The notes under the pieces were generated by a model. That model made no database searches. It saw only the letters and a list, made by a program, of their open reading frames with translations, and was not told the origin of the DNA. A stretch of 62,867 nucleotides of DNA, counting the filler, from Octopus bimaculoides (Eukaryota): the NCBI RefSeq assembly GCF_001194135.2. It is 6 parts of 6 records of this genome, joined end to end, with 100 filler letters (N's around TTAATTAATTAA, not from the genome) between each part and the next. Parts side by side here need not be neighbours in the genome. Positions count along the whole stretch, not along the records: positions 20,611 to 32,900 come from NC_068997.1; 5 more parts are not named here. One strand, written 5' to 3'. Of this stretch, positions 30,953 through 31,282 are shown piece after piece (positions within the stretch are counted from its first letter, which is position 1; every line of letters starts with the position of its first letter). The translations under genes and the position numbers were made by a program.

Positions 30953-31282
30953 GCTAAATGTGTCTAAGGTGTTACAAACACCTACATTGCTCTAAATAAG
31001 AGCTAAAATGCTCCAATATTGTAGTCAAAGCACATGATTGTATACAAATATAACGACAGAGACTATTATCGACTGAAAACTCCGATCGAGTATTACTGAC
31101 CGGTCAGTTTCGGCAGTTTCCGTTGCCTCATCAGTAAGGACTAGGTCGATCGGTGTTTCCGGGCGATTATAGTTCCTGTCTGTATATATTCATACAATTC
31201 TGTGCTGTGACTACAGCATTAAAGCATTTTAGCTCTTATTTCTAGCACTGTAGGTGTTTCTAACACCCTTATCGTATTTAGT
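30953..31282. mobile_element. ~330-bp fold-back element with ~130-bp inverted arms
   Basis: Left aaggtgttacaaacacctacattgctctaaataagagctaaaatgc...tgtagtcaaagcaca...ccgatcga matches the reverse complement of 31146-31270. Confidence 0.8.
31082..31153 (-). ncRNA. Type I hammerhead ribozyme-like motif (HHR-2) at the fold-back apex
   Basis: Minus strand: CUGAUGA (31134-31128), stem II ggca/ugcc, GAAA (31111-31108), perfect 14-nt palindromic stem III acugaccggucagu (31095-31108), GUA triplet. Proximal stem I is mismatched in this copy. Confidence 0.7.

What the first reader, a model, noticed from the sequence alone, without database searches (positions are those of the whole stretch)
30953..31282. 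Fold-back element with a hammerhead ribozyme core at the tip of its rod
Seen: two ~130-bp inverted arms (roughly 80-85% identical by eye) converge on a loop. On the minus strand the loop reads CUGAUGA-ggca(acggaaac)ugcc-GAAA-cugaccggucag-UA, a complete type I hammerhead core with a GUA site and a perfect 14-nt palindromic stem III. Known: minimal type I hammerheads with palindromic stem III occur in Penelope-like element termini and in retrozymes, and can cleave as dimers. Inference: a non-coding, rod-folding, self-cleaving mobile element (retrozyme/viroid-like, or a ribozyme-bearing MITE) that I do not recognise as described. The arms also pair uuacuga with ucaguaa, which would sequester the core, so rod and ribozyme folds may be alternative states. 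Caveat: proximal stem I (uua/aua) is mismatched in this copy, so it may be inactive.
Basis: partly seen in the sequence, partly recalled or inferred. Interest (0 to 1): 0.9.

Follow-up and report, generated by a model that had tools for sequence, protein, structure and literature searches.

The report
Fold-back repeat tipped by hammerhead relic
A 330-bp inverted repeat in SSR-rich animal-type DNA carries a complete hammerhead-ribozyme core at its tip, but it lacks the stem the ribozyme needs, so it is most likely a dead, truncated leftover of the known hammerhead-bearing retroelements of animals, not a new kind of self-cleaving element.

Summary
Arms 30954-31089 and 31146-31281 are 79% complementary, and both strands fold far better than shuffles (z -19 and -14.6). 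On the minus strand the 56-nt centre reads CUGAUGA, GGCA(acggaaac)UGCC, GAAA, CUGACCGGUCAG, UA. That is every invariant hammerhead position, a 4-bp helix II and a 14-nt palindromic helix III. A motif this complete arises by chance about 2.5e-6 times per such loop, though about 44 times per Gb.

It fails as a ribozyme at this locus. No helix I pair adjoins the core. Rfam gives only a type III partial hit of 20-24 bits (gathering score 48.5) and never lists the type I model. The active fold costs +4.4 kcal/mol relative to the rod.

The arms look like a DNA-level mirror copy: no indels over 122 bp, 17 transversions against 11 transitions, and no clear G-U bias. The UUA 5' of the core mirrors U16.1-A17-A1.1 and is not a helix I strand.

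Best reading: a 5'-truncated, decayed relic of a Penelope-like-element or retrozyme-type hammerhead element in a head-to-head or snap-back fold-back.

No other full copy could be reached. There is no tandem array, no TSD and no organism identification. The class is already described, so interest is low to moderate.

The parts
30954..31089 (.). Left arm of the inverted repeat. On the minus strand this is the ~141 nt lying 3' of the would-be cleavage site.
   Evidence: the repeat finder I1; ungapped alignment to the right arm.
31146..31281 (.). Right arm of the inverted repeat, a mirror copy of the left arm at 79-82% identity with no indels.
31090..31145 (-). Central 56 nt. The minus strand carries the hammerhead-like three-way junction.
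   Evidence: Sequence; motif scans.
31128..31134 (-). CUGAUGA box (C3-A9).
   Evidence: Sequence; aligned to the core of Rfam Hammerhead_3.
31112..31127 (-). Helix II hairpin GGCA-ACGGAAAC-UGCC: 4 bp with G10.1-C11.1.
   Evidence: Sequence; constrained fold.
31108..31111 (-). GAAA box (G12, A13, A14, A15.1).
   Evidence: Sequence.
31094..31108 (-). Helix III: A-CUGACCGGUCAG-U, a 14-nt perfect palindrome that folds as 5 bp plus a CCGG loop in a monomer, followed by A17. The predicted scissile bond lies between 31094 and 31093.
   Evidence: Sequence; constrained fold and dimer cofold.
31135..31145 (-). CCUAGUCCUUA, the 11 nt where the 5' strand of helix I should be. It is unpaired with AUAC (31093->31090). 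Its last three nt, UUA, mirror U16.1-A17-A1.1.
31093..31099 (-). UCAGUAA, the partner of UUACUGA (31131-31137) in the rod fold. This pairing sequesters C3-A6.
   Evidence: MFE structures.
31105..31122 (-). 9-nt tandem duplication CGGAAACUG|CCGAAACUG. It makes loop II and the GAAA box near-copies of each other.
   Evidence: Read directly from the sequence.
31283..31330 (+). Unique ~48-nt spacer ('tail') between the right arm and (CA)n. The left side has only ~21 nt of unrelated TG/TACA-type spacer (ending in ~13 nt of TACA-type repeat) between (TG)n and the arm.
30886..30940 (.). (TG)n flank, preceded by a 10-N gap and (TA)n. It mirrors the right-hand (CA)n(TA)n at 31331-31434.
   Evidence: TRF; inverted repeat I23.
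31331..31434 (.). (AC)n(AT)n flank on the right.
   Evidence: TRF.
29621..29659 (-). Probable old solo remnant of the outer part of the arm sequence, about 70% identical.
   Evidence: nhmmer with a profile built from this element's two arms only: E = 0.004, 11.2 bits. Four-arm profile: E = 0.0015. By pairwise score it is marginal.

Best explanation
The centre of the fold-back derives from a genuine animal type I hammerhead of the kind carried by Penelope-like elements (in their pLTRs) and their non-autonomous derivatives, the non-LTR retrozymes.

At this locus only the ribozyme from C3 onward, plus about 141 nt of downstream sequence, survives on the minus strand. The sequence to the right of the core is not the native 5' strand of helix I. 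It is a mirror copy of that downstream sequence, made at the DNA or cDNA level in one of three ways: a head-to-head insertion of a second 5'-truncated copy, hairpin-primed (snap-back) second-strand synthesis using the CUGA/UCAG microhomology, or fold-back repair. The two arms have since diverged by about 20%.

Consequently the locus folds as a long hairpin whose tip looks like a hammerhead. Helix I cannot form, so the ribozyme is most probably inactive here and was dead on arrival.

Shown: the motif, the inverted repeat, the missing helix I, the energetics and the substitution pattern. Inferred: the descent from a PLE or retrozyme family and the mechanism that created the mirror copy.
For: 1. 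All invariant HHR positions are present, with a 4-bp helix II, G10.1-C11.1 and a palindromic helix III. Chance expectation is 2.5e-6 per such loop. Real type I HHRs number thousands to more than 1e5 per animal genome, against about 44 chance sites per Gb.
2. The palindromic 15.2-16.2/loop 3 and the conserved G10.1-C11.1 are listed as hallmarks of metazoan PLE and canonical HHRs.
3. No helix I pair adjoins the core. UUA-CUGA is the exact inverted-repeat partner of UCAG-UAA (16.4-16.1, A17, A1.1), two nt out of register for helix I. A mirror copy predicts this; a native stem does not.
4. The arms have 0 indels in 122 bp, 17 transversions against 11 transitions, and 7 G-U-compatible mismatches on the minus strand against 4 on the plus. 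That is neutral DNA divergence of two copies, not a selected RNA rod.
5. PLE insertions are typically 5'-truncated. They often have an adjacent inverted 5'-truncated copy, a 30-40-bp tail at one end, an HHR near the 3' end and a bias for microsatellite targets (PMC8557442). Here the fold-back sits between (TA)n(TG)n and (CA)n(TA)n, with a ~48-nt unique tail on one side only.
6. Most genomic min-HHRs are solo and tied to truncated PLEs, and dual HHRs on opposite strands 100-700 bp apart are known. Solo retrozyme monomers are also known.
7. The arm sequence has a probable third, degraded occurrence at 29621-29659 (E = 0.004), which suggests a dispersed repeat.
Against: - No other full copy and no family consensus could be obtained, so descent from an HHR family is unproven.
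- No PLE RT or GIY-YIG remnant lies in the readable DNA, although 22% of the piece is N.
- Helix III (5-6 bp) is much longer than the 1-2 bp typical of metazoan type I HHRs.
- A truncation falling exactly at the 5' edge of the core is a narrow coincidence unless the structure itself caused it.
- Expected and observed sequences at the proposed snap-back junction differ: TAC expected, GGACTAGG found.
- If each arm decayed by about 10%, an untouched core plus helices II and III has a probability of only about 0.03-0.05. That is my own estimate, and ascertainment bias could explain it.
- Rfam does not recognise the site above threshold.
Confidence: 0.5

Rival explanations
1. The whole 330 nt (or about 378 nt with the tail) is one unit of a retrozyme or viroid-like non-coding element transcribed from the minus strand. 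The rod is an RNA-level structure that closes helix I. The rod and hammerhead folds are alternative states, and cleavage occurs in multimers or dimers through the palindromic helix III. This copy is merely mutated in proximal helix I.
For: - Size, low GC (39%) and extreme self-pairing match animal non-LTR retrozymes.
- The topology is right for a type I HHR in a circular or rod RNA: helix I continues into the rest of the molecule, and helices II and III are small hairpins at the tip.
- The alternative fold differs by only 4.4 kcal/mol, and a dimer through the palindromes is favourable (-64.9 against 2 x -24.5 kcal/mol).
- The minus strand folds slightly better than the plus.
- Solo monomers exist in known families.
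Against: - There is no tandem repeat of this unit.
- None of the proximal helix I pairs can form, and restoring them needs several changes including a 5-nt indel.
- The arms are perfectly in register with transversion-rich mismatches and no significant G-U asymmetry (7 v 4), unlike selected RNA rods.
- The element's ends coincide with the far end of the rod, which is not expected for a cDNA of a self-cleaved linear monomer.
- Rfam is below threshold.
Confidence: 0.2
2. The locus is a DNA fold-back element, either a MITE or an old local inverted duplication, and its centre resembles a hammerhead only by chance. Local micro-repeats (ACUGA twice plus UCAGU; GAAACUG twice) helped to create the resemblance.
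For: - A second fold-back lies 200 bp away (30598-30760, 74-nt arms, 91% complementary). Its arms align collinearly with these arms from the outer end (30 invariant columns; z = 4.7 and 3.3 for the right arm).
- Four of the core nucleotides (CUGA) and the 3' strand of helix III belong to the inverted repeat itself.
- The GAAA box lies in a 9-nt tandem duplication.
- Helix I is absent, as chance would predict.
Against: - The chance of a motif this complete in a given 56-nt loop is 2.5e-6.
- There is no TSD.
- Homology with the neighbouring fold-back is not significant on cross-validation (E = 0.35-3.6).
- G10.1-C11.1, A15.1-U16.1, H17 and the fully palindromic helix III are all hallmarks that chance need not supply together.
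Confidence: 0.2
3. The locus is a hairpin-RNA or small-RNA-producing inverted repeat, or an assembly artefact of a draft scaffold, with no relation to ribozymes.
For: The scaffold is a gap-ridden draft with seven N runs. Long hairpins are abundant here and draw many sub-threshold miRNA-model hits.
Against: The arms are only 79% complementary, whereas artefactual palindromes are near-perfect. No N gap lies inside the element. No miRNA family hit covers 30953-31282 at a meaningful score.
Confidence: 0.05

Closest known systems
Animal non-LTR retrozymes (Cervera & de la Pena 2020, PMC7229834), including the ~330-bp newt/axolotl satellite-2 type units
   Same: Unit of about 330 nt, non-coding, AT-rich and highly self-paired. 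Type I hammerhead topology with a 4-bp helix II and a palindromic helix III that would allow a double hammerhead. Solo monomers occur (10.64898/2026.07.22.740005).
   Different: Not tandem here. Helix I and the loop1-loop2 contacts are missing. Helix III is 5-6 bp against 1-2 bp. The arms look like a DNA mirror copy. No family and no circRNA evidence.
Penelope-like element pLTR hammerheads (min-HHRs) and the PLE insertion architecture (PMC4209133; PMC8557442)
   Same: Hammerhead near the 3' end of the unit. Mostly solo, 5'-truncated copies. Adjacent inverted 5'-truncated copies that form inverted repeats. A tail of tens of bp at one end. Microsatellite targets. G10.1-C11.1 and palindromic 15.2-16.2.
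   Different: No RT or GIY-YIG remnant nearby. PLE min-HHRs have a helix II of 6-8 bp with an extra nucleotide after A9 and almost no helix III. Here helix II is 4 bp with no extra nucleotide, and helix III is long.
Avsunviroid and satellite-RNA hammerheads with rod/ribozyme alternative folding and double-hammerhead cleavage (cited in PMC4209133)
   Same: The core is sequestered in a more stable rod. A palindromic helix III could pair between two copies.
   Different: Those are replicating RNAs with intact helix I and, usually, hammerheads of both polarities. This is a single genomic DNA locus with a one-strand motif.
MITEs and fold-back DNA elements
   Same: Long inverted arms with a short centre. 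A similar small fold-back lies next door. There is a possible dispersed arm remnant.
   Different: No TSD. The copy number is unknown. MITEs are not known to carry hammerhead cores, and none turned up in my literature search.

Membership tests
Hammerhead ribozyme (Rfam clan CL00010; type I = RF00163) | Invariant core: C3 U4 G5 A6 N7 G8 A9, G12 A13 A14, A15.1-U16.1, H17 | tested here: met
   CUGAUGA at 31134->31128, GAAA at 31111->31108, U16.1 at 31095, A17 at 31094.
Hammerhead ribozyme (Rfam clan CL00010; type I = RF00163) | Helix II closed by a loop, with G10.1-C11.1 | tested here: met
   GGCA/UGCC, 4 bp, 8-nt loop.
Hammerhead ribozyme (Rfam clan CL00010; type I = RF00163) | Helix III closed by a loop (type I topology) | tested here: met
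   ACUGA-CCGG-UCAGU; the 14-nt palindrome.
Hammerhead ribozyme (Rfam clan CL00010; type I = RF00163) | Helix I base-paired directly next to the core and cleavage site (usually 4-6 bp; 2 bp in the D. virilis variant) | tested here: not met
   2.1-2.4 (A, U, U, C) against 1.1-1.4 (A, U, A, C) gives only one isolated U-A. The HHR-constrained fold leaves an 11/4-nt internal loop before the distal 8-bp CCGAUCGA/UCGAUCGG.
Hammerhead ribozyme (Rfam clan CL00010; type I = RF00163) | Score at or above the Rfam gathering threshold | tested here: not met
   Only Hammerhead_3, at 20.1-24.0 bits against 48.5. Hammerhead_1 was never listed at E <= 10; overlapping same-clan hits with lower scores are suppressed by the tool.
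Hammerhead ribozyme (Rfam clan CL00010; type I = RF00163) | Site-specific self-cleavage | not testable with these tools
   Needs in vitro transcription of the minus strand.
Animal non-LTR retrozymes | Unit of about 170-400 bp, GC below 50%, RNA highly self-paired | tested here: met
   330 bp, GC 38.8%, MFE -158 kcal/mol, z = -19.
Animal non-LTR retrozymes | Head-to-tail tandem copies, each with a type I HHR (solo monomers also occur) | tested here: not met
   No ~330-bp period in TRF. No second copy in the piece.
Animal non-LTR retrozymes | Multi-copy family in the genome; expressed linear and circular RNAs | not testable with these tools
   No eukaryotic genome or read database is available. 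All indirect searches were empty.
Penelope-like elements (pLTR remnants) | RT plus GIY-YIG ORF, or pLTR homology to one | tested here: not met
   Pfam on all non-SSR open frames found only a mariner HTH_48. 22% of the piece is N.
Penelope-like elements (pLTR remnants) | Insertion architecture: 5' truncation, adjacent inverted truncated copy, one-sided 30-40-bp tail, microsatellite target | tested here: inconclusive
   All four are compatible with the locus. However, SSRs are so dense in this piece that adjacency carries little weight.
MITE / fold-back DNA transposon | Terminal inverted repeats | tested here: met
MITE / fold-back DNA transposon | Target-site duplication | tested here: not met
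   The best flank matches are 2-5 nt of SSR-like ACA/ATACA.
MITE / fold-back DNA transposon | Dispersed copies sharing the termini | tested here: inconclusive
   One remnant at 29621-29659 (E = 0.004). Similarity to the neighbouring fold-back is suggestive only.

The most novel reading that the evidence does not exclude
This locus is a member of an undescribed family of fold-back (MITE-like or hairpin-retrozyme) elements. In this reading a type I hammerhead is built on the axis of the palindrome. The CUGA box and the 3' strand of helix III are inverted-repeat partners, so the element toggles between an inert rod and a ribozyme that is active in dimers. The related small fold-back next door and the 29.6-kb remnant would be HHR-less relatives.
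Probability: 0.08. Interest if true: 0.7.

Novelty: new member of a known kind. Interest (0 to 1): 0.3.

Why it matters
If the best reading is right, this is one more degraded copy among the thousands of hammerhead-bearing retroelement fragments in animal genomes.

Its modest value is as a worked example of two things. First, PLE or retrozyme insertions, or snap-back cDNA, can generate hairpin loci that mimic a 'ribozyme on a rod'. Second, a complete catalytic core is not enough to call a ribozyme.

If the fold-back with the core on its axis turned out to be a conserved family, it would be a new architecture. It would link self-cleaving RNAs with inverted-repeat elements and provide a natural rod/ribozyme switch.

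Tried and rejected
**Searches for other copies or the source organism, all empty**
- blastn of the element against the piece found only itself and its own mirror.
- Exact-pattern scans of core plus palindrome and of arm blocks: JGI metagenomes, GTDB genomes, IMG/VR.
- The stop-free frame through the core, used as a protein handle: word-indexed search and exhaustive HMMER over 1.84 billion representatives.
- The retroelement-tail ORF and a mariner conceptual translation as handles for organism identification.
- Exact look-ups of two ORFs.
- Sequence strings in full-text papers gave three irrelevant hits. Supplements of the key HHR papers held nothing.

**Other checks**
- Rfam on the whole piece was swamped by SSR-driven miRNA hits.
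- Sub-range Rfam runs meant to expose Hammerhead_1 never listed it.
- The weak snoRNA and JPX_2 hits at the core (7-12 bits) are noise from the UGAUGA string. A C/D-box reading is rejected because the C and D boxes would be only about 24 nt apart.
- No tRNA or tRNA-SINE.
- The type III reading offered by Rfam is rejected because helix I would be a 4-nt stretch.
- A TSD search at three candidate boundaries found nothing convincing.
- Homology of the arms with the neighbouring fold-back is visually collinear but not significant on cross-validation.

Full report
**Context**

The piece (20611-32900) is eukaryotic draft scaffold. It is 34.6% GC, has seven N runs totalling 2678 N, and is extremely rich in microsatellites such as (TG)n, (TA)n and (TACA)n. 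No tRNA genes were found.

The readable open frames show only transposon debris. One is a mariner-type remnant at about 27.9-28.44 kb, with Pfam HTH_48 at 29.9 bits (cutoff 24.1) and three in-frame stops. The other is an ORF at about 31700-32237 that I take, from memory of such sequences, to be the C-terminal tail of a non-LTR retrotransposon ORF2. It has no Pfam match. The organism could not be identified.

**The observation**

The repeat finder reports arms 30954-31089 and 31146-31281, 136 nt long, 79% complementary, with 56 nt between them. Both strands fold far better than dinucleotide shuffles. The minus strand gives -158.4 kcal/mol (z = -19.1) and the plus strand -150.4 kcal/mol (z = -14.6).

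The minus strand of the centre reads as follows:
- CCUAGUCCUUA
- CUGAUGA (31134->31128)
- GGCA-ACGGAAAC-UGCC
- GAAA (31111->31108)
- CUGACCGGUCAG
- U (31095), A (31094), then the would-be cleavage site, then AUAC

Every invariant hammerhead position is present. These are C3-A9, G12-A14, the A15.1-U16.1 pair, H17 = A, and the G10.1-C11.1 pair at the base of a 4-bp helix II. Helix III with its loop is a perfect 14-nt palindrome.

That includes the UUACUGA/UCAGUAA alternative pairing, which the MFE fold uses, and the caveat about helix I.

**Is it more than chance?**

I used an order-2 Markov model trained on the piece. Core + helix II >=4 bp + helix III >=5 bp + H17 occurs at 2.2e-8 per position per strand. 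That is 2.5e-6 for a 56-nt loop read on both strands, 4e-4 for the whole readable piece, and about 44 per Gb (first estimate).

A large genome therefore holds dozens of chance sites, and the core alone proves nothing. One sitting exactly at the tip of a 136-bp inverted repeat, in the right topology, is very unlikely to be chance. It is the only CUGANGA-hairpin-GAAA site in the piece.

**Is it a working hammerhead?**

By the tests available, no.
- Rfam (cmscan, permissive E-value mode) gives only Hammerhead_3 at 20.1 bits on 341 nt and 116 nt, and 24.0 bits as a 5'-truncated match on 64 nt. The gathering score is 48.5. The alignment covers just the core and helix II.
- The type I model is never listed.
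- Positions 2.1-2.4 (A, U, U, C) face 1.1-1.4 (A, U, A, C), so no helix I pair adjoins the core.
- When helices II and III and an open core are enforced, the best structure leaves an 11-nt/4-nt internal loop before the distal 8-bp CCGAUCGA/UCGAUCGG. It is 4.4 kcal/mol less stable than the rod-extended fold, both in the 76-nt domain and in the full 330 nt.
- A dimer through the palindromes is favourable (-64.9 against 2 x -24.5 kcal/mol), but dimerisation does not create a helix I.

**What the arms are**

The arms align without a single indel over 122 bp, at about 82% identity. Of 28 mismatches, 17 are transversions. G-U-compatible mismatches number 7 on the minus strand and 4 on the plus. This is the signature of two DNA copies drifting apart. 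It is not that of a selected RNA rod, where asymmetric bulges and a wobble bias on the functional strand would be expected.

The inverted repeat continues past the 136-nt arms. After 3 unmatched nt on the left and 8 on the right, TTACTGA (31093-31099) mirrors TCAGTAA (31131-31137). The CUGA of the core and the UUA before it are therefore the mirror image of UCAG-U-A-A (16.4-16.1, A17, A1.1). UUA is complementary to UAA, two nucleotides out of register with what helix I would need (AUA).

The simplest reading is that the DNA to the right of C3 is not a native helix I strand at all. It is a mirrored copy of the sequence downstream of the ribozyme.

The flanks are mirrored too: (TA)n(TG)n on the left and (CA)n(TA)n on the right, with unrelated spacers of about 21 and 48 nt. 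SSRs are so dense here that this carries limited weight.

**Comparison with what is known**

- Metazoan type I HHRs typically have a 6-bp helix I, a 4-bp helix II and a 1-2-bp helix III capped by a small palindromic loop, and they often act as dimers.
- PLE pLTRs carry minimal variants with conserved G10.1-C11.1 and palindromic 15.2-16.2.
- Most genomic copies are solo and ascribed to truncated PLEs. Pairs on opposite strands 100-700 bp apart occur. The D. virilis variant has only a 2-bp helix I (PMC4209133).
- Animal non-LTR retrozymes are AT-rich, highly self-paired units of 170-400 nt with type I HHRs, usually tandem. Copy numbers run from thousands to more than 1e5 (PMC7229834).
- Solo monomers make up 0-100% of a family, and retrozymes derive from PLE pLTRs (10.64898/2026.07.22.740005).
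- PLE insertions are 5'-truncated and often carry an adjacent inverted 5'-truncated copy that forms inverted repeats. They often have a 30-40-bp tail at one end, have the HHR near the 3' end, and prefer microsatellite targets (PMC8557442).

Each odd feature of this locus has a counterpart in PLE or retrozyme biology.

**Best explanation (confidence about 0.5)**

The locus is a relic of a PLE or retrozyme-type hammerhead element. It is truncated at the 5' edge of the core and joined head-to-head to a mirror copy of its own 3' ~140 nt. The mirror copy arose through a second inverted truncated insertion, hairpin-primed second-strand synthesis at the CUGA/UCAG microhomology, or fold-back repair. 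It has since decayed by about 10% per arm. The ribozyme would have been dead on arrival.

Independently of the mechanism, I put the probability that the centre descends from a real hammerhead at about 0.7.

Weak points:
- No family consensus.
- No PLE ORF nearby.
- Helix III is atypically long.
- The junction sequence differs from the simple snap-back prediction (TAC expected, GGACTAGG observed).
- The core and helices II and III are suspiciously intact for a neutral relic. Ascertainment bias could explain that.

**Rivals**

It fits the size, composition, self-pairing and topology. It does not fit the lack of tandem copies, the missing helix I or the DNA-like arm divergence.
- A fold-back MITE or inverted duplication with a chance core (0.2).
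  - For it: a neighbouring fold-back at 30598-30760 (74-nt arms, 91% complementary) has arms that align collinearly with these from the outer end (z = 4.7 and 3.3 for the right arm).
  - For it: CUGA and UCAGU belong to the inverted repeat.
  - For it: the GAAA box lies in a 9-nt tandem duplication (CGGAAACUG|CCGAAACUG).
  - Against it: cross-validated profiles give only E = 0.35-3.6 for that homology, there is no TSD, and the chance probability is 2.5e-6.
- An hpRNA locus or an assembly artefact (0.05).

**A hint that the arm is a dispersed repeat**

A profile built from this element's two arms alone hits 29621-29659 (minus strand) at E = 0.004. The four-arm profile gives E = 0.0015. By pairwise score the match is marginal. 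No hammerhead-like sequence accompanies it; SSR and a gap lie where one would be.

**What could not be done**

None of the accessible collections contains this eukaryote. All attempts to find further copies or to name the organism failed. The decisive test is a family consensus from the source genome, followed by a cleavage assay. That test remains open.

**Verdict**

The structure is real and the hammerhead core is real. It is probably a non-functional relic of a known class of hammerhead-bearing retroelements in a fold-back arrangement. It counts as a new member of a known kind, and interest is low to moderate (0.3).

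Noticed in passing
window 30598-30760: A second, smaller fold-back lies 200 bp upstream. It has 74-nt arms, 91% complementary, and a 15-nt loop. It contains a mini-palindrome (GGTATCT-AAG-AGATACC) after TTAAGG, with AT-rich mirrored ends. It draws sub-threshold hits to several MITE-like miRNA hairpin models (mir-4524 at 52 bits against 68). 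Its arms align collinearly with the outer ~60 nt of the finding's arms, but cross-validated profiles are not significant.
   Followed up: partly
window 29617-29659: A short stretch resembles the outer part of the finding's arm at about 70% identity (nhmmer E = 0.0015-0.004). It is probably an old solo remnant, lying just after a (TG)n tract and a 10-N gap.
   Followed up: partly
window 27900-28440 (+): A decayed mariner/Mos1-type transposase remnant in one frame with three stops. Pfam HTH_48 scores 29.9 bits, above the cutoff. It is cut by the N gap at 28515.
   Followed up: partly
window 31700-32237 (+): An open frame ends in ...RPDIVVWDDKKKVCTVIEVSCPVDVNI...INY*, preceded by a CxxC...C knuckle-like stretch. 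It looks like the C-terminal tail of a non-LTR retrotransposon ORF2. There was no Pfam hit and no homologue in the protein searches.
   Followed up: partly
window 31105-31122 (-): A 9-nt tandem duplication, CGGAAACUG|CCGAAACUG, sits inside the hammerhead-like centre. Loop II and the GAAA box are therefore near-copies. ACUGA also occurs twice in direct orientation and once inverted.
   Followed up: no
window 20611-32900: Microsatellite density is unusually high, with 42 TRF rows in 9.6 kb of readable DNA and compound (CA)n(TA)n and (TACA)n tracts. These generate dozens of spurious sub-threshold hits to mir-297, mir-466 and mir-3149 models. CpG is not depleted in the element (12 observed, 12.4 expected).
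   Followed up: no
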